Assembly (NCBI RefSeq): GCF_947568905.1
Contig: NC_079170.1
Location: 17,980,001-18,044,000 of the forward strand
Direction: 5' to 3'
Length of the DNA stretch: 64,000 nt
Origin: Ostrea edulis
Lineage: Eukaryota
In this document: piece after piece, positions 38,658 to 61,151 of the stretch
How positions within the stretch are numbered: the first letter of the stretch is position 1
How the letters are laid out: every line of letters begins with the position of its first letter
The notes under the pieces: model-generated
Told to the model about the DNA's origin: nothing
Databases searched by the model: none
Seen by the model: the letters and a program-made list of their open reading frames with translations, nothing else
Made by a program: the position numbers and the translations under genes

Positions 38658-39052
38658 TGACACAGGATGGTACGCAATCTTCGTGGTAAGGGTTCCAATT
38701 CCTGCAGCAAGAAGGGGGGAGAGAAAGAGGAAAAAGGGAGAAAAGAGGGAGAAAAAAAGGGAATTTAGGGCCGAATTTTCGGCCCCTATTTCTAAAGCGT
38801 TTACTCTCATATTTCATTCCATTTGTCTCTAATTTGAGCTCAGTTTTCAGTATTTAAAAGCCATTTTTAATGCGAAAAATACTACAAAGTAGGGGCTCAT
38901 TTCCGTCCCCTTTATGTTAATTTTTAAGGGTTTTTTGCTAGTGTTCTATCATTTTCTCCTTAATGTAACTCATTTCAAAGCTAATTTTGCCTCCTTTTTC
39001 ATCATTTACATTTAAATATCCTTTCAAATCCTTGTGTTTTGTGTCATGGTCA

Positions 39053-39128
39053 ATTCCTGTGGTGTAGTGGTTAACACGCTTGTCCCATCAGCGGGCAAGA
39101 GATCTGGGTTCGAATCCCAGTGGGTTTT
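39053..39128 (+). tRNA. tRNA-like cassette inside Dada A1 (probably not a functional tRNA)
   Basis: A box TGGTGTAGTGGT; D stem GTGT/ACGC; anticodon stem TGTCC/GGGCA with loop CATCAGC; T arm CTGGG-TTCGAAT-CCCAG; poorly paired acceptor stem; T-run follows. Confidence 0.6.
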
Positions 39129-39424
39129 TCATTCTTGACACACTATGCAAGTGATTCCAACTCCAAAGTTCAAAGTAAAAACACAAATCAGATTTTTTTA
39201 TGCATTTATATAAAGTAAGAAAAAATATGTTATGTTCACAACCATTTCATTTAAAGACAACTTATTTACAATATATACAGTCTTTCCCTCTGCTTTTCAT
39301 AAGGGCTTGGGACCTTCAAAATCTATACAATGGATTCATATAAATTTAGGCAGCATTAAAAGTTTTTTTTGGTGTTTTTTGTGTTTTTAAATTTTTTTGG
39401 TTATTTTTTAAAACATTTTGGTAT

Positions 39425-42400
39425 CTAGTTCACTGGTGGTGGGGGTTCCTCTGATGGGTCATCTGGTGCCTTCCTCTTGCGACTGGTGTATCCCCTGGCA
39501 ATCATCGCTCTCATCCACTCCTCGTAGGACTGCTCGGCGGTGGCCTGGCAGAACCAGTTGCCGAAATATTGCCTGTGTGTGGGAGCGATCTTGGCTGCCC
39601 CACACTTCCCGCACTTGTTCGGTCCGACCCTGGGAGTGGAAGTCTTAACTCTCTCCCCCTCGGCTCTCTTCTTCTCCACCTTCCTCCTGTAGCTGGCCGT
39701 AGACTTGGACGGTCGCAACGGACCTATCAGCACGACTGGGACCGTGCGCTGTTGGTACGGCTGGAGGACGACGGACGGCGGCGGGAGTCTGGTCGGTGAC
39801 GGGAGTCTGGGCGGGGATGGGAGTCTGAGCGGGGACGGCATCCTGTTGGGCGACGACGGAGGAGACCGGATCCTAGTACGTGTCTGGCCGGCAGTGTTGC
39901 GAGGCAACACGTACCTGAAGGCAGGGGCGGTCTGGGACACCAAGGTGTCTGGACGGGTCAGGGCTGGCGGGACTGGCTGGGCGGCCGTCACAGGGGGGTC
40001 CGAAATCTCAATTCCCTGGGACAGGACCTGTTCCTCTCGCTTCTTCTGCCTCCTTCTGTCCCTGTAAAACACACGACACATTAGCCTCCCTAAAGCAGGT
40101 GAACTTAGTATGACTTGGCATTAAAAGAAATGTAGCCTATACAACTTACCACAGCAGGAGAGTGGTGTTGTTGATGGCCAGGAGCTGGATAGCTGTCATG
40201 GCCATTACTCTGGGGTTGTCCAGCACCACATCGCTGATCTTGGTGTAGGATGCCAGGATCAGACTCCATCTGGTGAGGGTAGGAGAATTCTGGCGTCTCT
40301 GGGGTCCCGTGTGCAACTGCATCAGCCTCCTGATGACTGCCTCCATGTAACGGTTGGCGTCCGGAAAGTTGGCCGGTCCCGAGGCACTGCCGACGAAGGA
40401 TCTACAAAGGGAAAAGGGGGACAACATGAGTCGTGGGTCGGACAATTAAAAGAATGAATCTATGTCAAGCGTCAATTGACAAATGACAGTCACCTCTTGG
40501 TCTTCTCCTCGTTGGCTTTCACCGGTCCTTTGGCTGTCTTGGCTGCCTGGAACCTGCCCTTGGGAGGGGACTTGGTCCTGGGCTGAAACACCGTAGGTCT
40601 TTTGTCCTGGGGTTCCAGTTTCTCCCGGAGGGCAATCAAGGCATCCTCCTGACTCCGAGACAGGGTCCTGCACGACCTGAGCTCATACAAGTAGTCTGCC
40701 AGGTCCTGCACTTGCTGGAGTCCGGAGGTGGGTTCCTGCAGCCGCTCCTCCTGTAATATCAGACACAAAGAGTCATATGATGGAAACAAACTCGTACAAA
40801 CACGAGAACATGTTTAGTGCCACAGTATTGTAACTCACCTGGTTCTGCTCTTCCGGTGCCGACTCTGCCTGGGATGAGAGGGGTGGAGTTCTTTCTGGTA
40901 GGGTGGAAGGTGCAGGCTCCGGCTGGGGTGGGGTCAGATGGGGGGTCTCGGGTCGAGGTGCTGGCATTGAGGCAGCGACAAGGTTAGGCTGTCCAGTGGG
41001 CCGTGCGGCTTTTCTCGGCGACCTGACAGTACTGCGAAGTTGCCGGACAGCACTAGTGCTGGATGGTGGCGGTGCAGTACTGGATGGTGGTTGCACGAGA
41101 CCGGCCACTAGCTTCCTGGACTGCATCACTGCTGCCGCTGCCTCGATGTCAGGCTCTGGAATGGTCAGGTCTTCGACGACTACCACTTCCTCGCCGAAAC
41201 CCTCGTCCATCTCCCCGTCATCCTCCTCCAGGTCCTCGTCCTCCTCCTTGATCTCCTGGAGTGCCTTGCCCGTCTGGGAATACAGGTACTCCACCCCTAT
41301 CAGTTCTCCGGTGTGGAACCGCGGGTGCTGGAAGGCGGGGTCTAAGGGGGACCCAAGGACAGTCTGTGCCAACTGGTTGACAGCGTGGCGCAGTTCCCTC
41401 TTGGTCATCCACTCCTGCTCTCGACCTTGGATGCTGACACCCTCCTCTGCGGCCTGAGTCTGCTTTGCCTCCTTCAGGGCGGTCAGGTCCTCATCGTCCC
41501 ACTGGAAGATGCAGCCGGACAGACGACGCATGAACTGGGGGTACAGGGGGTGCGATTATTCCGTGGTACAAGCACTCGCAATCCTCCTCATGAAATGCCA
41601 GATGTCCAGCCTCACCTACAATAGAAAGCATTGCGTCCTTACCAGTTGACAATGTGTCCTCAAAACATGCATTACCTAAGGGAAACAACACCTACCTGAG
41701 TGGCGAACCACTGCTCAAACTTCTTGCCTACGTAGTTCGTGCCACAGCAGTCACGATCCACGTAGACAACCTCAGGTGGGTTGACTCTGGCCTCGCTGTA
41801 CCTCCTCTGGAGTCCGTCGAACATGGCGTCCAGTCCAGCTCCCTCTCCAGCAGTGACGACAGACATCAACACCTGTCAGGACACAAAGTTCGAACAATTA
41901 TAATGTCAACATGTAGTAATATCGGGATTACAGCAATGCAAACATGAGCGTACTCACCTGGCCGTGTTCGTTCCCCACGTTGGTGGCCCACGCGGCAGTG
42001 TCGGCAGCCGTCCCCTGCAGCTTCCTCACCACTTTCTTGGTGGAGTCCACTTTCAGGATCCTCCCGTAGACGCTGGTGATGGAAGCCTTGACTTCCTCCA
42101 GTCTGGACATCACGTCTCGACAGAAGACGGAGGAAAGCCACTGGCAGGACGGGATCTTCCGGGGCGTGGGCGGGGGAGAAAACTGGGCCACAGCCAAGAG
42201 TCCCTTCTTCTGGGCGCTGGTGAAGGCCTGGCAGTCGCTGAGGTAGTGTGCCGTCCTCCTGAGCATCTCCTCGCCGTGGAGTTCCGAGAGGTTCTGCCGG
42301 AGTCTGGCGACACTGTTCCCCAGTCCCCGCTGTCTCAGCATCTTCACCACTTCCATGTCGCAAGCCATCATTCTGGTCAAGATGCAGGGAAACTGGAGGC

Positions 42401-43851
42401 GGTGTCCCACGTCGAGCTGGCTCACTATCTCCTCGTTCCAGCTGCTCAACTTCTTCTTGCATCTGGTGCACTCCAAGTACTCAGCAGCCAGATAGTAGAA
42501 GCCAGACATGGCCAACACTCTCCGCAGGGTCCGGTAGATGCCAGAGGAAATTAGCTCCTGTTTCTGGCACTTGAAGTCCGGACAAACCAGCCTCACAGCC
42601 CACAGTCTCTTAGGCATCCATAGAAAGATGGGCCTGGCAAAGTACCTGAGAAATTCAAAGACAGAATTAGGCTACCTTTTAACACCCCAATATCACTCCA
42701 AGAACACATTTATAACATCAGAGAGTCAAAGCACCTGTCAGCAATGGGCGGCTGCGTGCACACCAATGGGGGGCTAGGGGGGTGGTACCACATGTGGTCG
42801 ATGACGTCAAAACACATCTCTGGCTTTCCCTGCTGGTTGACGCGGAAGAGGGCCTTGGAGATCCACTTCAGGTCACACGGGTCCAGGACCTGTTTCCAGG
42901 TACTGTACACCACATCTACAATGTTGTAAGACAAAATAAGGCTTGTGTTGTGATTAAGCGATAGAATAATGAGCAGATGAAATATCAAAAGCATAATAAG
43001 TAAGCTTTATATCAATAGCAAAAGCAGTAAATGGAAGGCAGGTTACACGCCAAGCGCAAGTGAGTATATAGGTATTGTGTATCATTATATAATATAGGTA
43101 CCACACCAACACACCACCAGCCGAACACCATAAACTCACCGCAGGAACCGTGCTTGTAGGAAAATAGAAATAAATTCACGAATTAAGCATGATATCGTTC
43201 TCAGATTAGAAATATTACATATGAATAACACTATCGTTTTCAAATACACAGTCTATACTTACCACCCGAGAGGATCTCCATGGTCTCGATCTCCCGTACT
43301 GCGGCAGCCAGGTCTCGGTCCTCCATCACGTCGGTCTTCAGATGAGGCTCCTGGGACGGTCGGGTCGCTGTCGCCGGCATACTTACCTTCCTCGGCTTGG
43401 CATCCTCCAGAGACTTCTCCACCCTTCGCTTCGCCTCCTTCTCCTTCAGGATCTCGTGGACCATGGGGTACATCTTCACGTACTGCAGGAGACGGAACTT
43501 GTTCTGCGACAGGGGGGTACCCTCCTCCTTCTCGCCAGCACACGCGACTGTAGCCAGTACGCCAGTAACCCACCCGAGATCATTCTCCAGGACCCACTTG
43601 AACGTCTGTCCCCGGTACTTCCCGAACTGCAGGATGTGCTGGGACAGCACATTTTTGTAATTCCTCACAGCTGCGGGACCACCGAGGACCTCCACACGTT
43701 CTCTAGCATTCCTCATAACAGTCCAGCCGTCCAGTGCGGGCTTCAAAGGAAGCATGGGCAGGCTGCTAGCTTCCTTTGGGGCCCGCAGACGAAGCTCCCC
43801 CGAGTGGATTCTGGCGAACTGGGGCTCGAAAGGATTCAGGGATCTCTCCAT
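39425..43851 (-). pseudogene. Dada transposase gene, copy A1 (multi-exon; in-frame TAA at 41558-41556 and a probable internal deletion)
   Basis: Exons with GT-AG boundaries, e.g. 42645-41958, 41872-41696, 41615-40839, 40750-40494, 40401-40150, 40061-39425. Motifs LQFGKYRGQTFKW, YFARPIFLWMP..CPDFKC..EYLECTRC, DSTKK, YVDRDCC, LDIWHFMRR, GELIGVEYLYSQTG, and C-terminal CGKC..H..C. Confidence 0.8.
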
Positions 43852-44836
43852 GATTCTAAATGTAAATGTATGTCTCAAAAATTCTCACTTTTACATTAAA
43901 TGAATCAAATGCGCGCTCATATTACTGCGCCAAAAAACAACATGGGGGGTAAGTGACACATCACATAAATGTAGACACGTTTAACCTCAAATTTCCAGTA
44001 TTTTGAATGAAACTGAGTGTGCTACTGTCGAATTTAGTTTAAAATCAACTGATTTAAGCTTAAAAACAGCTATGTTTCATACAAACTATCTGAGATTGCA
44101 GTTTTCAACCAATGTAAACAGTGTGGAGGGGTCCGGTTTCGAGCAGGTAAGTTTTCGCTTAAAATGCTTATTTAAACCCTACCTACATGGTCGTGCATTA
44201 ACGGGACAATTGTTTATGATTAACTCTGTGCATTGAAGCTAAAATTCAGCACAGTTTCACTCAAAATATCTTTAAGAAAGGTTTTTCAAAATTTCTACAC
44301 ATTGTGTGTAATGACCGGCTCCGAGCAAACAAGTTTTCACTTAAAAATCACATTTAAACGTTATCTACACGGCCATGCATTTACGAGGCAATTCTACATG
44401 ATTGATTGAATTGATTTTAGGCCAAAATCCAGATGCAAATCGGTTAGAATTTAAATTCTGGGCATTTCATCGAAGGCCGCGTCCCTTCGAATTTCCTCTA
44501 TTTACAATGTTTACAACCTCCCGTTTTGCATAAATAAGCCGATTTCTCTCTGGCTACTCGCCTCAAATTAATGAAACTCATCGTGCTGAATCTTTTGATA
44601 CCAAATTCGACTTCAAACTCCCGATAAAACTCTAGTAAAGTCGATTTTTGTATTTTTCTATATAATCTACTACTTACCAAAATGGCGGTCGTCCCAATTT
44701 AGAATCTAAACGCGGCGCTCTGATTGGACGGAAGCCCAGAATTGGAACCAAGAATTGGAACTTTTGGGACAGAATTGGAACCATTCTGGGCATCTGATTG
44801 GTCCAGAAATTGGAATCTCACCACGAAGATTGCGGA

Positions 44837-44849
44837 GCAAGGATGACAC
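44837..44849 (+). ncRNA. RNU6: U6 middle fragment (about nt 67-79) between Dada A and Dada B
   Basis: GCAAGGATGACAC is an exact U6 segment. Confidence 0.75.
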
Positions 44850-47700
44850 TACTACAATCTTCGTGGTAAGCGTTCCAATTCCTGCAGCAAGAAGAGAGGA
44901 GAGAGAGAGGAAAAAGAGAGAAAAGAGGGAGAAAGGAAGGGAATTTCAGGGCCGACTTTTCGGCCCCTATTTCTAGGATATTTACTCTCACATTTCCTTC
45001 AATTTGCCTTTAATATGAGCTCATTTTTTAATATTTAGAAGCTATTTTCAGCGCTTAGAATTTCAAGATGATCAGGGAGACTCATTTCTTTCCCCTTTAT
45101 GTTAATTTTTAAGGGTTTTCTGCAAGTCTTTTTTCATTTTCTCCTAAATGTAACTCACTTCAAGGCTAATTTTGCCTCCTTTTTCAGCATTTACATTTAA
45201 ATAGCCTTTCAAATCCTTGTATTTTGTGTCATGGTCAATTCCTGTGGTGTAGTGGTTAACACGCTTGTCCCATCAGTGGGCAAGAGATCTGGGTTCGAAT
45301 CCCAGTGGGTTTTCTTTCTTGACACATTATGCAAGTGATTCCAACTCCAAATTTCAAGGAACAACAACAATCTGGTTTTATATGGATTGATATAAAGTAG
45401 AAAACAGCATTTTACATCGATACCAAAGAGCGGCAACACACAGAATACAAATACACTAGATATACAGCCTTTGTTAACTGTAAAATTGGACAAATAATAG
45501 AGCGGACAAATAAAACATTAAAATAAAGTCATTTACAATACATATCAAGCTTTCCCTCTGCTTTTATGAAGGGCTTGGGACCTTCTAAATTTATACCAAT
45601 GAATTCATATAAATTTAGGCAGCATTAAAAGCTTGTATAGTATTGTTGCTTCTTTTGTAGGTTCTGAATCTTTTTCAGGCCCTCTCTGTCTCACTGGAAG
45701 ATACAGCTGGACAGACAGCGCCTGGACTAGGGGTACATGGGGGTGTGAATGAGTTTTACAAGCACTGGAATCCTCCTCAGGAAGTGCCTTGCCTACAATG
45801 GAGAGAGAGTCATAGTTTTACTGGTTTACAGTACATCCTTAAAATTATATTTATAAATAAAGTTAATTGAATGAAGCTTGGTAAAATTTACAGTGAATAT
45901 AAAGAAATCAGATTCATGTAGTTCATTATAATTTATTTTTAATGTAATTCGTTACTAATGCAAAGTAACTGTAATTTAATCGATAACTTTTATAAATAAA
46001 GGTAATGGTGATTGTAATGGAAAAATTCCAATGTAATTGTAATTTAATGTATCACATTTCTAAATAATTGACCCCCAGCTTTGACAACACCATTTACCTC
46101 AATGGCAGCCCATCCCACAAACTTTTTGGGTACATACTGGGGACCACAACAGTCGCAGTCTATGTAGATAACCTTGAGTGGGTTGATGCTGGTGTCCAGT
46201 GATCATGGCAGCCAGTCTGATTCAGACATCAGCACCTCTCACGACATGAAATTAGAGTCGATGTACAGCCAAGTACAGTGAAATTTTATGGATAATGCAT
46301 TACAAACATGACATGTCCTCACCTGACTATGCTCAGTCCCCAAGTATCTTAACTACTTCCAGGTTGCAGCTAATGGCAGTCTCACGGTCCACAGTCTCTT
46401 GACACCCACAGAAAGATGAGCCTGGTCAAGCAGGTAAACCTACACCATAATCACACCACAGAAAGGATGCTTGTAGGAAAAGAAAAATAAAGTTGTGAAT
46501 TAAGCATGATATCGCTGTCTCGGCTACTGGCATACTTACCTTTTTTCCTCTTGGCTTCCTCCAGAGACTTTTTGGCCCTACGTTTGCCTCCTTTTCCTTC
46601 AGAATCTTGTATGCCAGTACAGTGGGGGCTTCAAAAGAGGCATGGGCAGCTGCTAGCCTCCTTAGAGACCCTCACACGAAGCTCCCCTGAGTGAATGATG
46701 GCAAACCGGGGATCGAAAGGGTTCTGGAATCTATGCATGACACTAAATGTAAATGTATGTCTCAGAATTCTCATTTTTACATTCAATGAATCAAGTGCGT
46801 GCTCATATCACTGCGCCAACAAAACAACATGGGGGGTAAGTGACACATCACATAAATGTAGACACGTTTAACCTAAAATTTCCAGTATTTTGAATGAAAC
46901 TGAGTGTGCTAATGTCGAATTTAGTTTAAAAGCAACTGATTTAAGCTTTAAAACAGCTGGGTTTCATACAAAATATCTGAGATTGCAGTTTTCAACCAAT
47001 GTAAACAATGTTGAGAGGACAGGATTCGAGCAGGTCAGTTTTCACTTAAAATACTTATTAAAACCCTATCTGCATGACCGTGCATTTACGGGACAATTAT
47101 TCATGATTAAATCTGTGCTTTAAAGCTGAAAATCAACACAGTTTCACTCAATATATCTTTGAGACACGTTTTTCAAATTTGTACACATTGTGTCAAAATA
47201 ACCGGCTCCGAGCAAACAGGTTTTCACTTAAAAATCACATTTAAACGTTATCTACACGGCCGTGCGTTTACGAGGCAATTGTACATGATTGATTGAATTG
47301 ATTTTAGGCCAAAATCCAGATGCAAATCGGTTAGAATTTAAATTCTGGGCATTTCATCGAAGACCGCGTCCCCTCGAATTTCCTCTATTTACAATGTTTA
47401 CAACCTCCCGTTTTGCATAAATAAGCCGATTTCTCTCTGGCTACCCGCCTCAAATCAATGAAACTCATCGTGCTGAATCTTTTGATACCAAATTTGACTT
47501 CAAACTCCCGATAAAACTCTAGTAAAGTCGATTTTTATATTTTTCTATATAATCAACTACTTACCAAAATGGCGGTCGTCCCAATTTAGAATCTGAACGC
47601 GGCGCTCTGATTGGACGGAAGCCCAGAATTGGAACCAAGAATTGGAACTTTTGGGACAGAATTGGAACCATTCTGGGCATCTGATTGGTCCAGAAATTGG
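44850..47700 (-). mobile_element. Dada element B1: diverged, heavily deleted non-autonomous relative of A
   Basis: Both terminal regions align with A (44855-45630 with ~38675-39360; 46780-47700 with ~43900-44812). It retains only fragments of transposase exons (~45700-45780, 46100-46450, 46500-46740) and carries an ATTAC-type hAT MITE remnant near 45940-46083. Confidence 0.8.
45238..45313 (+). tRNA. tRNA-like cassette inside Dada B1
   Basis: Same cassette as 39053-39128; loop CATCAGT. Confidence 0.6.
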
Positions 47701-47727
47701 TCGTGAAGCGTTCCATATTTTTTTTTT
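47701..47727 (+). ncRNA. RNU6: U6 snRNA 3' end with oligo-T terminator
   Basis: TCGTGAAGCGTTCCATATTTTTTTT is the canonical U6 3' end. Confidence 0.9.
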
Positions 47728-48172: not shown

Positions 48173-48337
48173 ATACTTACCTGGTGCAGAGGGCACCCTG
48201 ATCCCCAAGGGGGTCCCTCCAGGGCGAGGCCTTTCTATTGCACTTCAGATCGGCTGAACCTTGCGATCGCCCCAAATGCGGGCGACTCGGGCACGTAATT
48301 TTTAAGTGTGGGGGTCTGCGTTCGCGCTAACCCCTGG
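48173..48337 (+). ncRNA. RNU1: U1 snRNA gene (variant)
   Basis: ATACTTACCTGG 5' end; stem-loop II loop ATTGCACT; Sm-like AATTTTTA; terminal TGCGTTCGCGC..CCCCTG; about 165 nt. Confidence 0.92.
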
Positions 48338-51128: not shown

Positions 51129-51821
51129 TTGACTTTAAACAAAATCGCCAAATTATGTGCACATGTCTATATATTTTTGTTATTCTTTGTTATACACTGC
51201 ATATTATACTTATATATATACACACCTGATATGTTTAATAAATTTGTTGTAACTTAAATTATACATCTTGTTGTCAAACATAAGAATGCTTCAGCATTCA
51301 AAAACAAAATGAGCTCTATACAATGGAGACCCTGTACACGGCAGGCGCAGTTTGGTATATACTTGTAACTTTATCAAACCCCAACCACAAACTTGTGTTA
51401 TACACAGTTTCACAACCATAATATCGTGTTCGGTGGCAGGCATTTGAAGCGCCAACAATGAACTTGTGTTATATACTTGTAACTTTATTAAACGCCAACC
51501 ACCCACTTGGGTTATCAATCTAAATAAATTCACAACAACTTAAACATGCAGCTAAACTTAAACTTAAACATACACCTATCGCAATAACGCAAACGCAAAA
51601 TGTTGAACACGTTCCGACTCGCCAAACCAAAAAAATCGAACGCGTTCGACATACGAGCGGCCAAAATCACATAAATACCTTTTGTATATGTGAATTTTTT
51701 CCCCCACACATTTTAATATATTTACATACAATTTGTCACACATATAAACTACTCAAAATATATTATTAGTTTACTCCGTTTCTTTTTTGGATACCGGTCA
51801 CCAACTACTCGCATTTACACA

Positions 51822-52217
51822 ATGGCCCAATACATTCCTGTATTAGACTCGTTTATCATAGAGACCCTAGGATCCCGAGGGATTCCGCCACGGTCATCAG
51901 GCCAAAGATCATCAGCAACAACACCAGATCCAGTGATCAGGCCGGAGTCATCGGCCCCTCCTGTGCCACGAAGGCCAGCGCTAAGAGAATTTATGCCTCC
52001 GTTGCCTTCACCTCTCCAACCGCCACGCAAATACCCGATACCTAGTTGGGGCACATCGGCATTGAATGTGACAATTCAATGTCCCGTGTGTCGAGACGAA
52101 GGGATGAATGAGTTCTTGTGTCAGCAGTGTCTGCAAAGACCATCCTGTCATGACTGCACGCGGTCTTTAATAAAGGTCAGGAATAGTTGCCCTCTATGTC
52201 GATTTGACAGAGGGTAA
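51822..52217 (+). CDS. RING-like protein, unit 2 copy
   Basis: Translation identical to 35508-35903. Confidence 0.6.
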   Translation: MAQYIPVLDSFIIETLGSRGIPPRSSGQRSSATTPDPVIRPESSAPPVPRRPALREFMPPLPSPLQPPRKYPIPSWGTSALNVTIQCPVCRDEGMNEFLCQQCLQRPSCHDCTRSLIKVRNSCPLCRFDRG

Positions 52218-52508
52218 TGTATAGGCGACTGAGGAGGATGAAACATGAAGGGGTAGCTTACACAATAACTAGACTTCCAAGACCCGAGACTCGCTCCTTT
52301 GGCTGAACGGATGTTCGAAACAAGCTTAGCGCGATCGTGGTCAACAAGAATCGGAGTAAAGTCTTATTTGTTACCCGTGGTCTTTTGTAGATATAACACA
52401 AGTAAAAAAAATAATCAACAATATATATACCATCCCGAACATTTCAAATTATTAATACTGAATATATATCATACTGCCCGTAAACAATTTCTCATACTCT
52501 TTTGGAAT

Positions 52509-53135
52509 ATGTCGAACTTGAATTTATTTCAATTCAGTGTGCTCGCGTTGGGAATTGTTTCGTGGATGCCATTATATACCGGGATGCTGTTAGGTGTCGA
52601 TTGTAGCATGGTCAACCATGTGTGGGACAATAACTGCGGCTTGTCTATTCTCTTATTCGTCGTGGGAGATGGATTAAAGGAGGTCGTCGAAGCGACGATG
52701 AAGAAAAAGAACGAAAAGAACGAAAATCCTTACGACAAGATATTACTGACATTGTTCGCGCAAATTGCGGTGTATGGTTTTATGGCCCTAACCACTTTAA
52801 TGATCGTCCCGGAGTGCTGTGTTCTAAGATACATTCTGGAAGCCCTGCTGAAATTATGCCTCGGTCTCCTCGTGGGAATCATGACCATTGGCATGATGTC
52901 TTTAACCAACCAGATCACCGAAAAGCTGATTTTCTACATCGGCAGAGTCGTATTCGTCGTCGTGATTGGTATCCTCTTATTGAGCAGTAACATCTCATAC
53001 ACTCCATTCTTTAACGTATTCGCTTTTGTGTGGACGATAATGACAATGGTGGTTACGTGTTTCATGCGTAGAAATTACATGAAAGCGAACCATGCCGTAA
53101 TACAGAAAACACTTATGAGCGATCCTGACTTATGA
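52509..53135 (+). CDS. Multi-pass membrane protein, unit 2 copy
   Basis: Differs from unit 1 at VVF/VVL and DPDL/DPGL. Confidence 0.6.
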   Translation: MSNLNLFQFSVLALGIVSWMPLYTGMLLGVDCSMVNHVWDNNCGLSILLFVVGDGLKEVVEATMKKKNEKNENPYDKILLTLFAQIAVYGFMALTTLMIVPECCVLRYILEALLKLCLGLLVGIMTIGMMSLTNQITEKLIFYIGRVVFVVVIGILLLSSNISYTPFFNVFAFVWTIMTMVVTCFMRRNYMKANHAVIQKTLMSDPDL

Positions 53136-53299
53136 CGATACAGAGGACATCCATCCATCTAGTTCTTAAGCAGTTGGTTTGTACAATCTACACAACAAGG
53201 ATTGTTTCTACACTGTTTACATGTGCACTGTAAATCTATGTTAGTCAATAAAGATAAATTACAATGGTAGAATTGTAGAACTTTTTTCCCCCCACCCGG

Positions 53300-53542
53300 T
53301 CACCCACAAAGGTGCAACCACTTGCTGGTTATACTTGTTAAAATATTTGATACCCCATTTGCAACCGAATATTTGAAACTGGATACGTCACTAACCTTAT
53401 AATGTGTTATGGGTTTTTCGCATTTTTCACATCCGTAATAAGTATAAACAGTTCCATCGTGCCCGTATACTTGAACAGGCATAACCTTAAAACAGCGCCA
53501 TTCTTCTAATGACATATATGCTGTGTAGTCAGAGACATGCAC
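53300..53542 (-). CDS. Small Cys-containing ORF, unit 2 copy
   Basis: Translation identical to 36986-37228. Confidence 0.4.
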   Translation of the reverse strand: MHVSDYTAYMSLEEWRCFKVMPVQVYGHDGTVYTYYGCEKCEKPITHYKVSDVSSFKYSVANGVSNILTSITSKWLHLCG

Positions 53543-54906
53543 AATTTTTTTCTCATAACACCCTTTTAAAAAGCCTCATTTCTCCCTTTTTCACCAACCA
53601 ACAAGGAACCGAAGCCAAACTGTATGCACAAGATAACGACATCGGTATAAGTAACGGTAGACATGCCAAAGGAACCACAAGTGCCCCCGCCATTGTGATT
53701 ACCACAGATGCTAGTCGGTCTCGAAGTAGGGACAGAGACGTTCACATATTTATACTGTGGTGCTACCAAACCGTTACCATACACAATGCCGTATTATAGC
53801 TGCGTACGAGGCGACTTTCCCATAACGTCTTAAAGTCGCAGCCCACCAAGACGTTATGAGTCGAACATAACGTTAACCTAGTTTCGCCTCGCGGTCTTAT
53901 AATTTCTGAACAAATGCCATTCTTACTGGTTGGATGAAAAAAGAAAGTATGGACGTGCTAAAAGGACGCATTAATGGTATAATGCATAATATACGTAGTG
54001 TGATGAACATAAAGTCTTAATACATAATTAAGAACCACAATAGCAAACTAAGGTCCAAGTGAAAAAAAAAAATATCCAAGAATTTGAATTATTACTACGA
54101 CTTAATTATTGTGTTATGGTACACATACAATATACCCTACATGGACATCACACAATATCTATTCCATAACAAAATCTGTCTGCAAGTATACGTTATTGGA
54201 AGTTGGTATTGAATGCCGATGTGGTCCGAGTTTCTTCGGGAGGCATGAAATAAAACGCATGAAAACAGATAGAAGGACAGGCAATACCGATAATAACGGG
54301 GACATGCTACATAAACGCTTCCTGTCCTTAGCTAGTAGCATCGCCCTATATCGGTAACACCCTGTTGACATGCATTCATATTGGTACCTCAGATTGCCAC
54401 TACCTACACACAGTTTCCCCTAGAAAATGTTCCAACCTATCATAAAGAAGCGCCCTTTTGAAAGTTTGCCGGTCTCAAACATTTCACCGCCTGGACATTG
54501 GGGGTGAATTTGTCAAGGCGTAGTGTGAAATGGGGAATGCACTGAAACTTGTTGGACAGGAAAAATTAGGTAAAACATACAGACAGACTAACGAACTGAT
54601 AATTATTTTATTAATTTGTTTGTTTTGTTGGGTTTAGAATTTTACCATGTTATGTATATAATCTATGATGACATAAGAGAAAATGCTTTACACTGCTCTC
54701 TAAATGTGAATTTTTCATTTTATTTCATTTTTTAAAAATGACACATGTGTGAAAGGTGTATGTGTGCGTGTGTGTAGCAGTTGTCTTTCTTGTATACGCA
54801 GTAACAACGTACTTCCAGATGTTTACAGTATGCAAATTCTTAAAACGTTTATTTCATACTACTCTCCGCTCAACAGTACTTATATTTTGTAGATGATTTT
54901 GCTTGT

Positions 54907-54933
54907 GTACTTGCTTTTCGGCAGTACATATAT

Positions 54934-54965
<32 letters not shown>

Positions 54966-54972
54966 GGCCCCT
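54907..54972 (+). ncRNA. RNU6: U6 snRNA 5' part, unit 2
   Basis: Same as 38592-38657. Confidence 0.95.
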
Positions 54973-55357
54973 TGACACAGGATGGTACGCAATCTTCGTG
55001 GTAAGGGTTCCAATTCCTGCAGCAAGAAGGGGGGAGAGAAAGAGGAAAAGAGGGAGAAAAAAAGGGAATTTAGGGCCGAATTTTCGGCCCCTATTTCTAA
55101 AGCGTTTACTCTCATATTTCATTCCATTTGTCTCTAATTTGAGCTCAGTTTTCAGTATTTAAAAGCCATTTTTAATGCGAAAAATACTACAAAGTAGGGG
55201 CTCATTTCCGTCCCCTTTATGTTAATTTTTAAGGGTTTTTTGCTAGTGTTCTATCATTTTCTCCTTAATGTAACTCATTTCAAAGCTAATTTTGCCTCCT
55301 TTTTCATCATTTACATTTAAATATCCTTTCAAATCCTTGTGTTTTGTGTCATGGTCA

Positions 55358-55433
55358 ATTCCTGTGGTGTAGTGGTTAACACGCTTGTCCCATCAGCGGG
55401 CAAGAGATCTGGGTTCGAATCCCAGTGGGTTTT
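55358..55433 (+). tRNA. tRNA-like cassette in Dada A2
   Basis: Same as 39053-39128. Confidence 0.6.
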
Positions 55434-55729
55434 TCATTCTTGACACACTATGCAAGTGATTCCAACTCCAAAGTTCAAAGTAAAAACACAAATCAGATTT
55501 TTTTATGCATTTATATAAAGTAAGAAAAAATATGTTATGTTCACAACCATTTCATTTAAAGACAACTTATTTACAATATATACAGTCTTTCCCTCTGCTT
55601 TTCATAAGGGCTTGGGACCTTCAAAATCTATACAATGGATTCATATAAATTTAGGCAGCATTAAAAGTTTTTTTTGGTGTTTTTTGTGTTTTTAAATTTT
55701 TTTGGTTATTTTTTAAAACATTTTGGTAT

Positions 55730-58700
55730 CTAGTTCACTGGTGGTGGGGGTTCCTCTGATGGGTCATCTGGTGCCTTCCTCTTGCGACTGGTGTATCCCC
55801 TGGCAATCATCGCTCTCATCCACTCCTCGTAGGACTGCTCGGCGGTGGCCTGGCAGAACCAGTTGCCGAAATATTGCCTGTGTGTGGGAGCGATCTTGGC
55901 TGCCCCACACTTCCCGCACTTGTTCGGTCCGACCCTGGGAGTATAAGTCTTAACTCTCTCCCCCTCGGCTCTCTTCTTCTCCACCTTCCTCCTGTAGCTG
56001 GCCGTAGACTTGGACGGTCGCAACGGACCTATCAGCACGACTGGGACCGTGCGCTGTTGGTACGGCTGGAGGACGACGGACGGCGGCGGGAGTCTGGTCG
56101 GTGACGGGAGTCTGGGCGGGGATGGGAGTCTGAGCGGGGACGGCATCCTGTTGGGCGACGACGGAGGAGACCGGATCCTAGTACGTGTCTGGCCGGCAGT
56201 GTTGCGAGGCAACACGTACCTGAAGGCAGGGGCGGTCTGGGACACCAAGGTGTCTGGACGGGTCAGGGCTGGCGGGACTGGCTGGGCGGCCGTCACAGGG
56301 GGGTCCGAAATCTCAATTCCCTGGGACAGGACCTGTTCCTCTCGCTTCTTCTGCCTCCTTCTGTCCCTGTAAAACACACGACACATTAGCCTCCCTAAAG
56401 CAGGTGAACTTAGTATGACTTGGCATTAAAAGAAATGTAGCCTATACAACTTACCACAGCAGGAGAGTGGTGTTGTTGATGGCCAGGAGCTGGATAGCTG
56501 TCATGGCCATTACTCTGGGGTTGTCCAGCACCACATCGCTGATCTTGGTGTAGGATGCCAGGATCAGACTCCATCTGGTGAGGGTAGGAGAATTCTGGCG
56601 TCTCTGGGGTCCCGTGTGCAACTGCATCAGCCTCCTGATGACTGCCTCCATGTAACGGTTGGCGTCCGGAAAGTTGGCCGGTCCCGAGGCACTGCCGACG
56701 AAGGATCTACAAAGGGAAAAGGGGGACAACATGAGTCGTGGGTCGGACAATTAAAAGAATGAATCTATGTCAAGCGTCAATTGACAAATGACAGTCACCT
56801 CTTGGTCTTCTCCTCGTTGGCTTTCACCGGTCCTTTGGCTGTCTTGGCTGCCTGGAACCTGCCCTTGGGAGGGGACTTGGTCCTGGGCTGAAACACCGTA
56901 GGTCTTTTGTCCTGGGGTTCCAGTTTCTCCCGGAGGGCAATCAAGGCATCCTCCTGACTCCGAGACAGGGTCCTGCACGACCTGAGCTCATACAAGTAGT
57001 CTGCCAGGTCCTGCACTTGCTGGAGTCCGGAGGTGGGTTCCTGCAGCCGCTCCTCCTGTAATATCAGACACAAAGAGTCATATGATGGAAACAAACTCGT
57101 ACAAACACGAGAACATGTTTAGTGCCACAGTATTGTAACTCACCTGGTTCTGCTCTTCCGGTGCCGACTCTGCCTGGGATGAGAGGGGTGGAGTTCTTTC
57201 TGGTAGGGTGGAAGGTGCAGGCTCCGGCTGGGGTGGGGTCAGATGGGGGGTCTCGGGTCGAGGTGCTGGCATTGAGGCAGCGACAAGGTTAGGCTGTCCA
57301 GTGGGCCGTGCGGCTTTTCTCGGCGACCTGACAGTACTGCGAAGTTGCCGGACAGCACTAGTGCTGGATGGTGGCGGTGCAGTACTGGATGGTGGTTGCA
57401 CGAGACCGGCCACTAGCTTCCTGGACTGCATCACTGCTGCCGCTGCCTCGATGTCAGGCTCTGGAATGGTCAGGTCTTCGACGACTACCACTTCCTCGCC
57501 GAAACCCTCGTCCATCTCCCCGTCATCCTCCTCCAGGTCCTCGTCCTCCTCCTTGATCTCCTGGAGTGCCTTGCCCGTCTGGGAATACAGGTACTCCACC
57601 CCTATCAGTTCTCCGGTGTGGACCCGCGGGTGCTGGAAGGCGGGGTCTAAGGGGGACCCAAGGACAGTCTGTGCCAACTGGTTGACAGCGTGGCGCAGTT
57701 CCCTCTTGGTCATCCACTCCTGCTCTCGACCTTGGATGCTGACACCCTCCTCTGCGGCCTGAGTCTGCTTTGCCTCCTTCAGGGCGGTCAGGTCCTCATC
57801 GTCCCACTGGAAGATGCAGCCGGACAGACGACGCATGAACTGGGGGTACAGGGGGTGCGATTCCGTGGTACAAGCACTCGCAATCCTCCTCATGAAATGC
57901 CAGATGTCCAGCCTCACCTACAATAGAAAGCATTGCGTCCTTACCAGTTGACAATGTGTCCTCAAAACATGCATTACCTAAGGGAAACAACACCTACCTG
58001 AGTGGCGAACCACTGCTCAAACTTCTTGCCTACGTAGTTCGTGCCACAGCAGTCACGATCCACGTAGACAACCTCAGGTGGGTTGACTCTGGCCTCGCTG
58101 TACCTCCTCTGGAGTCCGTCGAACATGGCGTCCAGTCCAGCTCCCTCTCCAGCAGTGACGACAGACATCAACACCTGTCAGGACACAAAGTTCGAACAAT
58201 TATAATGTCAACATGTAGTAATATCGGGATTACAGCAATGCAAACATGAGCGTACTCACCTGGCCGTGTTCGTTCCCCACGTTGGTGGCCCACGCGGCAG
58301 TGTCGGCAGCCGTCCCCTGCAGCTTCCTCACCACTTTCTTGGTGGAGTCCACTTTCAGGATCCTCCCGTAGACGCTGGTGATGGAAGCCTTGACTTCCTC
58401 CAGTCTGGACATCACGTCTCGACAGAAGACGGAGGAAAGCCACTGGCAGGACGGGATCTTCCGGGGCGTGGGCGGGGGAGAAAACTGGGCCACAGCCAAG
58501 AGTCCCTTCTTCTGGGCGCTGGTGAAGGCCTGGCAGTCGCTGAGGTAGTGTGCCGTCCTCCTGAGCATCTCCTCGCCGTGGAGTTCCGAGAGGTTCTGCC
58601 GGAGTCTGGCGACACTGTTCCCCAGTCCCCGCTGTCTCAGCATCTTCACCACTTCCATGTCGCAAGCCATCATTCTGGTCAAGATGCAGGGAAACTGGAG

Positions 58701-60153
58701 GCGGTGTCCCACGTCGAGCTGGCTCACTATCTCCTCGTTCCAGCTGCTCAACTTCTTCTTGCATCTGGTGCACTCCAAGTACTCAGCAGCCAGATAGTAG
58801 AAGCCAGACATGGCCAACACTCTCCGCAGGGTCCGGTAGATGCCAGAGGAAATTAGCTCCTGTTTCTGGCACTTGAAGTCCGGACAAACCAGCCTCACAG
58901 CCCACAGTCTCTTAGGCATCCATAGAAAGATGGGCCTGGCAAAGTACCTGAGAAATTCAAAGACAGAATTAGGCTACCTTTTAACACCCCAATATCACTC
59001 CAAGAACACATTTATAACATCAGAGAGTCAAAGCACCTGTCAGCAATGGGCGGCTGCGTGCACACCAATGGGGGGCTAGGGGGGTGGTACCACATGTGGT
59101 CGATGACGTCAAAACACATCTCTGGCTTTCCCTGCTGGTTGACGCGGAAGAGGGCCTTGGAGATCCACTTCAGGTCACACGGGTCCAGGACCTGTTTCCA
59201 GGTACTGTACACCACATCTACAATGTTGTAAGACAAAATAAGGCTTGTGTTGTGATTAAGCGATAGAATAATGAGCAGATGAAATATCAAAAGCATAATA
59301 AGTAAGCTTTATATCAATAGCAAAAGCAGTAAATGGAAGGCAGGTTACACGCCAAGCGCAAGTGAGTATATAGGTATTGTGTATCATTATATAATATAGG
59401 TACCACACCAACACACCACCAGCCGAACACCATAAACTCACCGCAGGAACCGTGCTTGTAGGAAAATAGAAATAAATTCACGAATTAAGCATGATATCGT
59501 TCTCAGATTAGAAATATTACATATGAATAACACTATCGTTTTCAAATACACAGTCTATACTTACCACCCGAGAGGATCTCCATGGTCTCGATCTCCCGTA
59601 CTGCGGCAGCCAGGTCTCGGTCCTCCATCACGTCGGTCTTCAGATGAGGCTCCTGGGACGGTCGGGTCGCTGTCGCCGGCATACTTACCTTCCTCGGCTT
59701 GGCATCCTCCAGAGACTTCTCCACCCTTCGCTTCGCCTCCTTCTCCTTCAGGATCTCGTGGACCATGGGGTACATCTTCACGTACTGCAGGAGACGGAAC
59801 TTGTTCTGCGACAGGGGGGTACCCTCCTCCTTCTCGCCAGCACACGCGACTGTAGCCAGTACGCCAGTAACCCACCCGAGATCATTCTCCAGGACCCACT
59901 TGAACGTCTGTCCCCGGTACTTCCCGAACTGCAGGATGTGCTGGGACAGCACATTTTTGTAATTCCTCACAGCTGCGGGACCACCGAGGACCTCCACACG
60001 TTCTCTAGCATTCCTCATAACAGTCCAGCCGTCCAGTGCGGGCTTCAAAGGAAGCATGGGCAGGCTGCTAGCTTCCTTTGGGGCCCGCAGACGAAGCTCC
60101 CCCGAGTGGATTCTGGCGAACTGGGGCTCGAAAGGATTCAGGGATCTCTCCAT
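55730..60153 (-). CDS. Dada transposase gene, copy A2 (spliced frame open where checked; probable in-frame internal deletion)
   Basis: Lacks the TAA insertion of A1 and reads DIWHFMRRIASACTTESHPLYPQF; same exon structure. Confidence 0.7.
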
Positions 60154-61151
60154 GATTCTAAATGTAAATGTATGTCTCAAAAATTCTCACTTTTACATTA
60201 AATGAATCAAATGCGCGCTCATATTACTGCGCCAAAAAACAACATGGGGGGTAAGTGACACATCACATAAATGTAGACACGTTTAACCTCAAATTTCCAG
60301 TATTTTGAATGAAACTGAGTGTGCTACTGTCGAATTTAGTTTAAAATCAACTGATTTAAGCTTAAAAACAGCTATGTTTCATACAAACTATCTGAGATTG
60401 CAGTTTTCAACCAATGTAAACAGTGTGGAGGGGTCCGGTTTCGAGCAGGTAAGTTTTCGCTTAAAATGCTTATTTAAACCCTACCTACATGGTCGTGCAT
60501 TAACGGGACAATTGTTTATGATTAACTCTGTGCATTGAAGCTAAAATTCAGCACAGTTTCACTCAAAATATCTTTAAGAAAGGTTTTTCAAAATTTCTAC
60601 ACATTGTGTGTAATGACCGGCTCCGAGCAAACAAGTTTTCACTTAAAAATCACATTTAAACGTTATCTACACGGCCATGCATTTACGAGGCAATTCTACA
60701 TGATTGATTGAATTGATTTTAGGCCAAAATCCAGATGCAAATCGGTTAGAATTTAAATTCTGGGCATTTCATCGAAGGCCGCGTCCCTTCGAATTTCCTC
60801 TATTTACAATGTTTACAACCTCCCGTTTTGCATAAATAAGCCGATTTCTCTCTGGCTACTCGCCTCAAATTAATGAAACTCATCGTGCTGAATCTTTTGA
60901 TACCAAATTCGACTTCAAACTCCCGATAAAACTCTAGTAAAGTCGATTTTTGTATTTTTCTATATAATCTACTACTTACCAAAATGGCGGTCGTCCCAAT
61001 TTAGAATCTAAACGCGGCGCTCTGATTGGACGGAAGCCCAGAATTGGAACCAAGAATTGGAACTTTTGGGACAGAATTGGAACCATTCTGGGCATCTGAT
61101 TGGTCCAGAAATTGGAATCTCACCACGAAGATTGCGGAGCAAGGATGACAC

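What the first reader, a model, noticed from the sequence alone, without database searches (positions are those of the whole stretch)
38673..44834. Transposon ends are inverted copies of a pseudo-dyad in U6 centred on the insertion site
Seen: the left end, reverse-complemented (38700-38673), is AATTGGAACCCTTACCACGAAGATTGCG; the right end (44808-44834) is AATTGGAATCTCACCACGAAGATTGCG, with a perfect 15-bp inner repeat. U6 nt 29-55 is AATTGGAACGATACAGAGAAGATTAGC, the same two motifs (AATTGGAA, GAAGATT) at the same spacing as the right end. Read on the plus strand, the left end (CGCAATCTTCGTGGTAAG(G/C)GTTCCAATT) also resembles U6 nt 79-102 (CGCAAATTCGTGAAGCGTTCCATA). These two U6 segments are quasi-complementary around nt ~65, where the element sits. 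Three extra GAATTGGAAC copies lie subterminally (44739, 44752, 44772). Inference: the transposase may read the same bipartite motif in its own ends and, twice in inverted orientation, in the target. That would let the RNA-structure-driven symmetry of U6 (telestem) act as a DNA landing pad and explain site specificity without a guide. Short target-like inverted motifs have, to my recollection, been noted for Dada-U6; I do not know of the full dyad model being described.
Basis: partly seen in the sequence, partly recalled or inferred. Interest (0 to 1): 0.8.

Follow-up and report, generated by a model that had tools for sequence, protein, structure and literature searches.

The report
Dada-U6 transposon with U6-like ends
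A known type of jumping gene that lands only inside U6 snRNA genes carries ends that look like the two halves of U6 itself; this sharpens a published hint that the element finds its target by the same DNA contacts it uses on its own end, but the proposed two-sided "dyad" reading holds only for this lineage.

Summary
The element is a Dada-U6 DNA transposon. Its transposase carries a DUF6729 domain and lies on the minus strand. It sits in a U6 gene exactly after nt 64.

Comparison with a third copy in this genome, two other genomes and about 15 published Dada-U6 consensus ends moves the true termini outward. Element A is 38664-44843, flanked by a perfect 6-bp repeat, TGACAC.

With these termini the right end aligns with the U6 5' arm without gaps and in register with the cut site. 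AAATTGGAA and GAAGATT match exactly (19 of 37 bases, P about 6e-4). The GAAGA part of this was published by Kojima and Jurka in 2013. The GTTCCAA/TTGGAAC part is not in that text, and it recurs as subterminal repeats in several Dada-U6 families.

The left end resembles the U6 3' arm (28 of 38 columns), but the register drifts and other families mostly lack the resemblance. Dada-U1 shows only the one known motif. U6 is predicted to fold into one long hairpin whose apical loop is the duplicated target site.

One-sided end mimicry is well supported. The full dyad model is only weakly supported.

The parts
38592..38657 (+). U6 snRNA gene, 5' part (human nt 1-64), ending in ...GGCCCCT
   Evidence: Rfam U6 hit. 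The stretch is identical to the array U6 up to CCCCT.
38658..38663 (+). Left copy of the 6-bp flanking repeat, TGACAC. It occupies the place of the canonical GCGCAA.
   Evidence: Copy C in the same genome has GCGCAA at exactly this place and is otherwise 99.5% identical.
38664..44843 (-). Dada-U6 element A (6180 bp). The transposase is encoded on the minus strand, opposite to U6.
   Evidence: Termini were set by three things: the rule of 14 nt plus the inverted-repeat core seen in copy C, L048, L051 and the published consensus ends; the perfect TGACAC repeat; and the right terminus TCCTTGC..., which resembles the published 5' termini TCCCTGC and CTCCTGG.
38664..38677 (+). Left terminal 14 nt, AGGATGGTACGCAA. 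It matches U6 nt 70-83 at 12 of 14 positions.
   Evidence: The same block is AGGATGGGGCGCAA in L048 and AGGCTGGGGCGTAA in Daphnia.
38673..38700 (+). Its core TCTTCGTGG is at 38678-38686 and GTTCCAATT is at 38692-38700.
39512..43824 (-). Transposase-coding exons. DUF6729 lies at 41928-42994. The match to full-length homologues is patchy, so the gene may be incomplete.
   Evidence: Pfam hit at E = 1e-62, 1206 homologues, and tblastn with P0009, P0016 and P0011.
44739..44781 (+). Three subterminal direct copies of GAATTGGAAC. Flanking CTGATTGG sequences are probably CCAAT boxes for the transposase promoter.
44808..44834 (+). Its core CCACGAAGA is at 44821-44829.
44830..44843 (+). Right terminal 14 nt, TTGCGGAGCAAGGA.
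   Evidence: Compare the zebrafish terminus ...TTCTCCGCAAGAG before its target duplication.
44844..44849 (+). Right copy of the flanking repeat, TGACAC.
44850..47700 (-). Element B, an older, internally deleted copy of the same family (87-92% identical to A). Its left inverted-repeat core is at 44858-44866, and its right end is cut off after AATTGG.
47701..47727 (+). Genuine U6 3' end (nt 87-107 plus the T run). The array spacer and a U1 gene at 48173-48336 follow.
54979..61145 (-). Element A', a copy of A inside the 12.3-kb segmental duplication (99.8% identical). It has the same TGACAC repeats.

Best explanation
38664-44843 is a Dada-U6 DNA transposon. It sits between nt 64 and 65 of a U6 snRNA gene, at the apical loop of the long hairpin that U6 is predicted to form, and it lies next to an older deleted copy (B).

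Each end has a 14-nt non-inverted terminus followed by a subterminal inverted repeat. In this lineage the repeat has grown to 28 bp, with 15 bp perfect.

The right end, at the 5' side of the transposase gene, is a base-for-base image of the U6 5' arm when measured from the cut site. TTGGAA lies 29-34 nt from the cut and GAAGATT lies 13-19 nt from it. To the transposase, U6 therefore looks like a solitary right end.

The likeliest mechanism is that the same DNA-binding contacts that position the enzyme on its own end also dock it on the U6 5' arm and place the cut 14 nt beyond GAAGA. This step is inferred, not shown. It would explain three things: the site specificity without a guide, the tandem insertions on the U6 5' side, and the tolerance of a non-canonical 6-bp site.

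The left end's likeness to the U6 3' arm is real but secondary. It follows partly from the left end being the inverted copy of the right end while U6 is itself a pseudo-palindrome. It follows partly from descent from, or sequence exchange with, a genuine U6 3' half in this lineage.
For: Identity as Dada-U6:
- DUF6729 transposase homologous to proteins that sit in U6-inserted elements in two other genomes.
- Transposase orientation opposite to U6, and a 6-bp flanking repeat.
- 14 nt plus a TCTTC core at both ends, as in PMC3706591.

In-register image of the 5' arm:
- 19 of 37 bases match with exact 9-mer and 7-mer blocks, P = 6e-4.
- A pattern written for transposon 5' ends (target duplication, 14 nt, TCTTC) also picks out U6 itself.

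Generality:
- The core lies 14 nt from the target duplication in the zebrafish, Daphnia, carp, goldfish, perch, loach and seabream families and in L048, and a diverged form of it in L051 (TGTTCTCC) and the darter family (TCCTCTCTG).
- GTTCCAATTTT repeats occur in the loach family, GTTCCAAYTT in the darter family, GTTCCAAG in a perch family and GTTCCAC in the carp and Danio families. All lie at the same end.

One-sidedness:
- A's apparent target was CCCCT|TGACAC|TACTACAATCTTCG. The canonical 5' arm is present, but the 3' side has foreign spacing.
- Both published papers note that one flank of the target is the more conserved.
- Tandem insertions occur here and in L048.

Descent or exchange for the left end:
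- A and B keep different U6-identical bases. My manual inference of their ancestral left end is about 87% U6-like.
- The published Dada-U6-2_TrLo consensus ends in a near-exact U6 nt 71-104.
Against: - No protein-DNA binding has been measured for any Dada transposase.
- The termini on which the in-register argument depends rest on one independent right end in this genome.
- An alternative parse exists: right end at 44834, flanked by GAGCAA. It keeps GAGCAAGGATGACAC as a contiguous U6 nt 65-79, matching 14 of 15 bases.
- The GTTCCA-type repeats sit at different registers in different families. In some they are replaced by other motifs: GTTTCAC, GTGTCAA, GGTCCTAAAA.
- GTTCCAATT contains CCAAT, so it could be a promoter element rather than a transposase site.
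- The left end carries characters specific to the U6 3' arm (CGC, CGTG, AAG). The right end mirrors them, which is what a two-arm reader would favour.
- Element A's coding capacity looks incomplete, so this copy may not be autonomous.
Confidence: 0.55

Rival explanations
1. Full dyad model. A symmetric transpososome reads the same bipartite motif (TTGGAA ... GAAGATT) on both transposon ends and, twice in inverted orientation, on both arms of U6. The DNA symmetry imposed by the RNA structure of U6 serves as the landing pad.
For: - U6 is predicted to fold as one long hairpin whose apical loop GCGCA is the duplicated target site, and the dyad score is above shuffles.
- The left end matches the U6 3' arm at 28 of 38 columns, including characters specific to that arm.
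- The inverted repeat of this element reads like a blend of the two arms: CAC and GCG from the 3' arm, GAAGATT from the 5' arm.
- The right end, 6-mer and left end joined in that order would read like U6 nt 26-104.
Against: - The 3'-arm motifs lie 1-3 nt out of register with the left end.
- In about 15 other Dada-U6 families the left terminal 14 nt keep only ARGA, and none has GTTCCAATT at the left end.
- The common core TCTTCTCTG matches U6 nt 85-93 at only 2 of 9 positions.
- Dada-U1 mirrors one motif only.
- Element A apparently inserted where the 3' side had different spacing.
Confidence: 0.2
2. Historical by-product. The U6-like blocks at the ends are pieces of U6 acquired by recombination, gene conversion or flank carry-over. 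The 6-bp flank is known to travel with Dada elements. On this view the blocks are now simply part of the element and play no role in choosing the target.
For: - The inferred ancestral left end is about 87% identical to the U6 3' arm and decays differently in A and B.
- The Dada-U6-2_TrLo consensus ends in a genuine U6 3' half.
- Flank 6-mers are carried along. TGACAC replaces GCGCAA in A relative to copy C. TGGCGC replaces TAGCTC in a tRNA-Lys insertion. PMC8869645 reports the same.
Against: - The arrangement is inside-out: the 3'-arm-like block sits next to the U6 5' half. Simple flank capture does not produce this.
- Similarity at the right end starts sharply at AAATTGG and comes in blocks separated by fully diverged spacers. 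That pattern suggests constraint rather than uniform decay.
- The GAAGA core at 14 nt is conserved from Daphnia to fish.
Confidence: 0.2
3. The left end has evolved to rebuild a U6-like gene after insertion. The junction of the U6 5' half and the left end passes the Rfam U6 threshold over the full model length. This would either limit harm to the host or yield a stable chimeric Pol III transcript that the element uses.
For: - The chimera at 38592-38703 scores 73 bits over model positions 1-105. L048 gives 76 bits.
- The left-end GTTCCAATT is perfectly complementary to U6 AATTGGAAC.
Against: - No T-run terminator follows. The first TTTT lies about 75 nt further on.
- The loop and the 3' U tract are altered.
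- At least 26 intact U6 copies exist in the array, so relief of harm is not needed.
- Most families lack the feature.
Confidence: 0.04

Closest known systems
Dada-U6 transposons (Kojima and Jurka 2013, PMC3706591; Kojima 2022, PMC8869645)
   Same: - A Dada-type transposase with the DUF6729 region, encoded opposite to U6.
- Insertion after U6 nt 64, with a 6-bp flanking repeat.
- No inverted repeat at the very tips.
- A subterminal TCTTC.../...GAAGA core 14 nt from the target duplication.
- The same core present in U6 at the same distance.
- Tandem insertions.
- Replacement of the flanking 6-mer.
   Different: - The inverted repeat is 28 bp with 15 bp perfect, instead of 9 bp.
- The core is TCTTCGTGG rather than TCTTCTCTG.
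- The right end keeps the U6 spacing between TTGGAA and GAAGATT, so that 37 nt align with U6 nt 28-64 without gaps.
- The left end copies U6 nt 70-104.
- The flanking repeat is TGACAC rather than GCGCAA.
- The searched text of the two papers does not mention the second motif, the U6 hairpin symmetry or the subterminal GTTCCA repeats.
IS30 dual target specificity: near-palindromic hot spots, or insertion next to its own inverted repeats (PMC9333248). IS911 'targeted' transposition is similar.
   Same: A DDE transposase inserts next to sequences that look like its own end, and tandem or abutted copies result.
   Different: These are bacterial elements with a copy-out/paste-in circle mechanism and a 2-bp duplication. 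No circle intermediate is known for Dada. The relationship is an analogy only. The IS911 part rests on my own knowledge and on the mention.
IS elements that insert into REP palindromes (PMC1525189)
   Same: The target is the apex of a conserved multicopy hairpin-forming sequence.
   Different: Different transposase families and hosts. I did not read the paper beyond its abstract.

Membership tests
Dada superfamily, Dada-U6 lineage | Dada-type DDE transposase | tested here: inconclusive
   The N-terminal DUF6729 region matches strongly (E = 1e-62), with 52-56% identity to many homologues. Homologues P0009 and P0016 lie inside U6-inserted elements. I did not locate the DDE catalytic residues, and parts of the core (P0009 residues about 680-1070) match only patchily.
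Dada superfamily, Dada-U6 lineage | Insertion at one specific site of U6 (between nt 1-70 and nt 65-104), with a 6-bp target site duplication | tested here: met
   The U6 5' part ends at CCCCT (nt 64), followed by the 6-bp repeat on both sides. Copy C has the canonical GCGCAA. In A the 6-mer is TGACAC, which is non-canonical.
Dada superfamily, Dada-U6 lineage | Transposase encoded opposite to the U6 gene (fish families) | tested here: met
   U6 is on the plus strand and all coding matches are on the minus strand.
Dada superfamily, Dada-U6 lineage | [quoted passage not shown] | tested here: met
   The terminal 9 nt are not inverted (AGGATGGTA against TCCTTGCTC). The cores TCTTCGTGG and CCACGAAGA each lie 14 nt from TGACAC, and the U6 GAAGA lies 14 nt from GCGCAA. 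The core sequence is a variant, matching 5-6 of 9 positions.
Dada superfamily, Dada-U6 lineage | Phylogenetic placement of the transposase inside the Dada-U6 clade | tested here: inconclusive
   A quick tree of the DUF6729 region puts the window protein in the half that holds P0009 and P0016 (U6-inserted), away from P0003 (tRNA-inserted). No supported clade contains it.

The most novel reading that the evidence does not exclude
Dada-U6 transposase reads a bipartite code, GTTCCAA(TT) plus GAAGA(TT), at fixed distances from the cut. It reads this code on its own ends and on both arms of the U6 gene. The DNA symmetry that U6 owes to its RNA hairpin (telestem plus internal stem-loop, with the apex at the duplicated target site) would then mimic an abutted end-to-end junction of the transposon. 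This would be a protein-only, guide-free route to single-site specificity, and changing the ends and the DNA-binding domain together might re-target it.
Probability: 0.2. Interest if true: 0.7.

Novelty: new variant of a known kind. Interest (0 to 1): 0.42.

Why it matters
Dada elements are among the few eukaryotic DNA transposons with strict single-site specificity, and they have been proposed as safe-harbour vectors. How they find their site is unknown.

This copy gives the clearest natural picture so far that the target looks like one of the element's own ends. Two motifs, not one, lie at the same distances from the cut. The site is also the apex of a hairpin-shaped gene.

That turns a one-line speculation from 2013 into specific tests. 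One can mutate the motifs, change the spacing, and compare one-arm with two-arm targets. The second motif is marked as a candidate binding site because it recurs as subterminal repeats in several fish families.

Tried and rejected
1. Independent junctions in the same genome. Searches with both ends and with the protein found only A and A', B and B', copy C and copy D. Copy C lies at the edge of the U6-U1 array and has a left end only. Copy D is truncated at both ends. There is therefore no second independent right end.

2. Boundary parses.
   - Ending A at 44834 with GAGCAA as the duplicated site leaves the left 6-mer unmatched and breaks the 14-nt rule.
   - Both were rejected in favour of 38664-44843. 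The cost is that GAGCAAGGA|TGACAC reads like U6 nt 65-79, which then needs a secondary explanation. Plausible ones are a small slippage deletion or a U6-like terminus, as in the zebrafish ...GCAAGAG and the Capitella ...GCGCAAG termini.

3. A reading in which the 'element' is merely the spacer of a tandem U6 array. I rejected it. A and B share derived, inverted-repeat-forming changes relative to U6 (TC, GT, AATT). The block encodes a Dada transposase. The same left terminus occurs in other genomes.

4. Simple capture of flanking U6. I rejected it because the U6-like blocks are inside-out relative to the flanks.

5. More Dada-U6 loci from other genomes. P0001 is not on record. The loci of P0015, P0025 and P0008 hold no U6. 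P0003 lies in tRNA arrays and P0011 lies in a non-U6 repeat.

6. The Rfam U6 model annotates only the 5' stem, so it could not serve as a structure reference. I used a minimum-energy fold instead.

7. Generalisation to Dada-U1. Only the published GTGCAAT motif is in register with U1. The subterminal GTCTAC repeats are absent from the canonical U1 sequence as I recall it; that comparison was not made with a tool.

8. Read-mapping tools were not used. The stretch contains U6, which is nearly identical to human U6, and reads were not needed for the claim.

9. I did not paste the published consensus ends into a script, to avoid typing long sequences. The cross-family comparisons were made by eye.
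Full report
WHAT IS THERE

The window is G000:C7:17980001-18044000 of an 895-Mb, 52-contig genome. Rfam finds U6 at 38592-38703 and 54907-55018, and U1 at 48173. A self-comparison shows that 35366-47698 is duplicated at 51680-64000 with 99.8% identity.

Inside each copy there are two related elements. A is full length. B is internally deleted and 87-92% identical to A.

The species' own U6 comes from a tandem U6-U1 array of at least 26 units on the same chromosome. Against that reference the locus reads, in order:
- U6 nt 1-64 (38592-38657)
- element A
- element B, whose right end is cut off after AATTGG
- genuine U6 nt 87-107 (47701-47727)
- the array spacer and U1

All quoted strings are at the quoted coordinates. 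The two 'ends' align as inverted repeats over 38 columns, with a perfect 15-bp core. Exact AATTGGAAC copies in the window lie, apart from one stray copy, only in U6 and at the element ends. They include the three subterminal copies.

The left end scores 31 against U6, while 4831 random 62-mers from the window average 13.6 and never exceed 28. U6 aligned to its own reverse complement scores 30, against 17.4 +/- 4.1 for shuffles. Its minimum-energy fold is one long hairpin from nt 29 to nt 108 with apical loop GCGCA.

WHERE THE ELEMENT REALLY ENDS

A third copy, C, lies at the edge of the U6 array. It is 99.5% identical to A over 2.8 kb, including 170 bp of flank. Its junction reads CCCCT-GCGCAA-AGGATGGTACGCAA-TCTTCGTGG, whereas A reads CCCCT-TGACAC-AGGATGGTACGCAA-TCTTCGTGG. 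The two differ only in the 6-mer, at four of its six positions.

Homologues of the transposase led to two other genomes with U6-inserted elements. Together with Figure S2 of PMC3706591 and Dataset S1 of PMC8869645, they show a fixed geometry: target duplication, 14 nt, TCTTC core ... GAAGA core, 14 nt, target duplication.

Applied to A, this geometry gives termini at 38664 and 44843. It also reveals a perfect 6-bp repeat, TGACAC, on both sides. The right terminus read in the transposase orientation, TCCTTGC..., resembles the published termini TCCCTGC... and CTCCTGG....

An alternative parse (end at 44834, flanked by GAGCAA) cannot be fully excluded. It breaks the 14-nt rule and leaves the left 6-mer unmatched.

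WHAT THE ENDS RESEMBLE

With these termini the last 37 nt of A align to U6 nt 28-64 without gaps and in register with the cut. AAATTGGAA and GAAGATT match exactly, for 19 of 37 bases and P = 6e-4 against window 37-mers. The spacers between the blocks are fully diverged, which looks like constraint on motifs rather than uniform decay.

A pattern written for transposon 5' ends also picks out U6 itself. The target is, in effect, a solitary right end.

The left end matches U6 nt 70-104 at 28 of 38 columns, but it needs three gaps. Ungapped, it matches only 9-15 of 37. Its motifs therefore lie 1-3 nt further from the cut than their U6 counterparts.

WHAT IS ALREADY KNOWN

Kojima and Jurka (PMC3706591) described the following:
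- the 9-bp subterminal repeats TCTTCTCTG and CAGAGAAGA
- the equivalent motif for Dada-U1
- a speculation that these repeats serve target recognition

Kojima 2022 (PMC8869645) added that Dada recognises primary sequence, mainly on one side of the site, and that the flanking 6-mer can be replaced by one carried with the element. Term searches of the main text found no mention of a second motif, subterminal direct repeats, hairpin or dyad symmetry in either paper.

1. The TCTTC core 14 nt from the target duplication is found in the zebrafish, Daphnia, carp (A and B), goldfish, perch (A and B), loach and seabream families and in L048. L051 (TGTTCTCC) and the darter family (TCCTCTCTG) carry diverged cores at the same distance.

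2. A GTTCCA[A/C] motif recurs as direct repeats just inside the core at the transposase-5' end. The loach family has GTTCCAATTTT, an exact 11-mer of the U6 reverse complement. The darter family has GTTCCAAYTT, perch A has GTTCCAAG, and the carp and Danio families have GTTCCAC. The register varies. Other families use GTTTCAC, GTGTCAA or GGTCCTAAAA instead. Only the present element keeps the U6 spacing.

3. At the left end only ARGA is conserved in the terminal 14 nt. Matches to U6 run from 5 of 14 (zebrafish) to 12 of 14 (this element). No other family has GTTCCAATT there.

4. Dada-U1 ends carry GTGCAAT 19 nt from the terminus, in register with the U1 target sequence as I recall it. Their subterminal GTCTAC repeats have no counterpart in that recalled U1 sequence.

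The 3'-arm half does not generalise.

NATURAL EXPERIMENT IN THE WINDOW

If A's flanks are joined, its target was CCCCT|TGACAC|TACTACAATCTTCG. That is the canonical U6 5' arm, a non-canonical 6-mer, and then B's left end with only 8 nt before its TCTTCG block. The insertion point was thus set from the 5' arm.

This fits the tandem insertions on the U6 5' side seen here, in L048 and in the published Dada-U1 cases. It is an inference, because later small deletions cannot be excluded.

WHY THE LEFT END LOOKS LIKE THE 3' ARM

Part of the likeness is transitive. The left end is the inverted copy of the right end, and U6 is a pseudo-palindrome.

The left end also carries characters specific to the 3' arm (CGC, CGTG, AAG), and A and B retain different U6-identical bases. 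The inferred ancestral left end is about 87% identical to U6 nt 70-104. Most of its differences are the bases that pair with the right end.

The published Dada-U6-2_TrLo consensus ends in an almost exact U6 nt 71-104. Descent from, or conversion by, a real U6 3' half in some lineages is therefore likely. A function in docking is possible but unsupported.

VERDICT

This is a Dada-U6 transposon with unusually long, U6-like subterminal repeats. Target mimicry of the right end is solid and extends a published observation. The symmetric dyad model is attractive but holds only for this lineage and remains untested.

Interest is moderate. The kind of element is known, the essential idea is in print, and the new elements are sequence-level inferences. 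Those new elements are the second motif, the in-register 37-nt alignment, the hairpin apex and the one-sided natural experiment.

Noticed in passing
window 35366-47698 and 51680-64000: A 12.3-kb segmental duplication at 99.8% identity carries the whole composite of U6, A and B, so every feature appears twice.
   Followed up: partly
G000:C7:5943756-5946416 (L046), minus strand: A third copy, C, sits at the last unit of the U6-U1 tandem array (period about 1975 bp, at least 26 intact U6). It is 99.5% identical to A, including the flank, but has the canonical GCGCAA where A has TGACAC. It is truncated at A's position 41310 and joined to B-like sequence.
   Followed up: partly
window 39052-39128 and 45237-45314 (also 55357-55433 and 61539-61616): A tRNA-like sequence lies about 390 bp inside the left end of both A and B. 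Rfam scores it 40 bits. ARAGORN calls Met-CAT in A and SeC-TCA in B. Its origin is unknown.
   Followed up: no
window 38767-38788 and 44948-44969: A conserved palindrome, GGGCCGAATTTTCGGCCC, lies about 100 nt inside the left end of A and B. It holds the first TTTT that a Pol III read-through from the U6 promoter would meet.
   Followed up: no
window 44715-44805: CTGATTGG motifs (CCAATCAG on the transposase strand) are interleaved with the GAATTGGAAC repeats. The same boxes occur in L048 and in the published Dada-U6 and Dada-U1 5' ends, so they are probably CCAAT boxes of the transposase promoter.
   Followed up: partly
L049:17540-17612 and L050:17546-17603: One Dada element (protein P0003) sits in a tRNA-Lys gene in L049 and in a different tRNA in L050. 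In the tRNA-Lys copy the expected TAGCTC is replaced by TGGCGC, an independent example of a flanking 6-mer travelling with the element.
   Followed up: partly
L051:15816-15920: In this other genome an inverted U6 3' half abuts the 5'-truncated U6 that carries the Dada insertion. This suggests head-to-head rearrangement of U6 fragments.
   Followed up: no
L065:12826-12911: A Dada 3' end (CAGAGAACA, 14 nt, then TTGCGC) has no U6 nearby, so a U6-type 6-mer may have been carried to a non-U6 site.
   Followed up: no
G000:C7:5874972-5884958: A fourth, degenerate copy, D, is 82-92% identical to A, contains stop codons and lacks both termini.
   Followed up: partly
window 48173-48336: The U1 gene downstream is a divergent variant, though it scores 137 bits over the full model length. 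It is part of the U6-U1 array unit.
   Followed up: no
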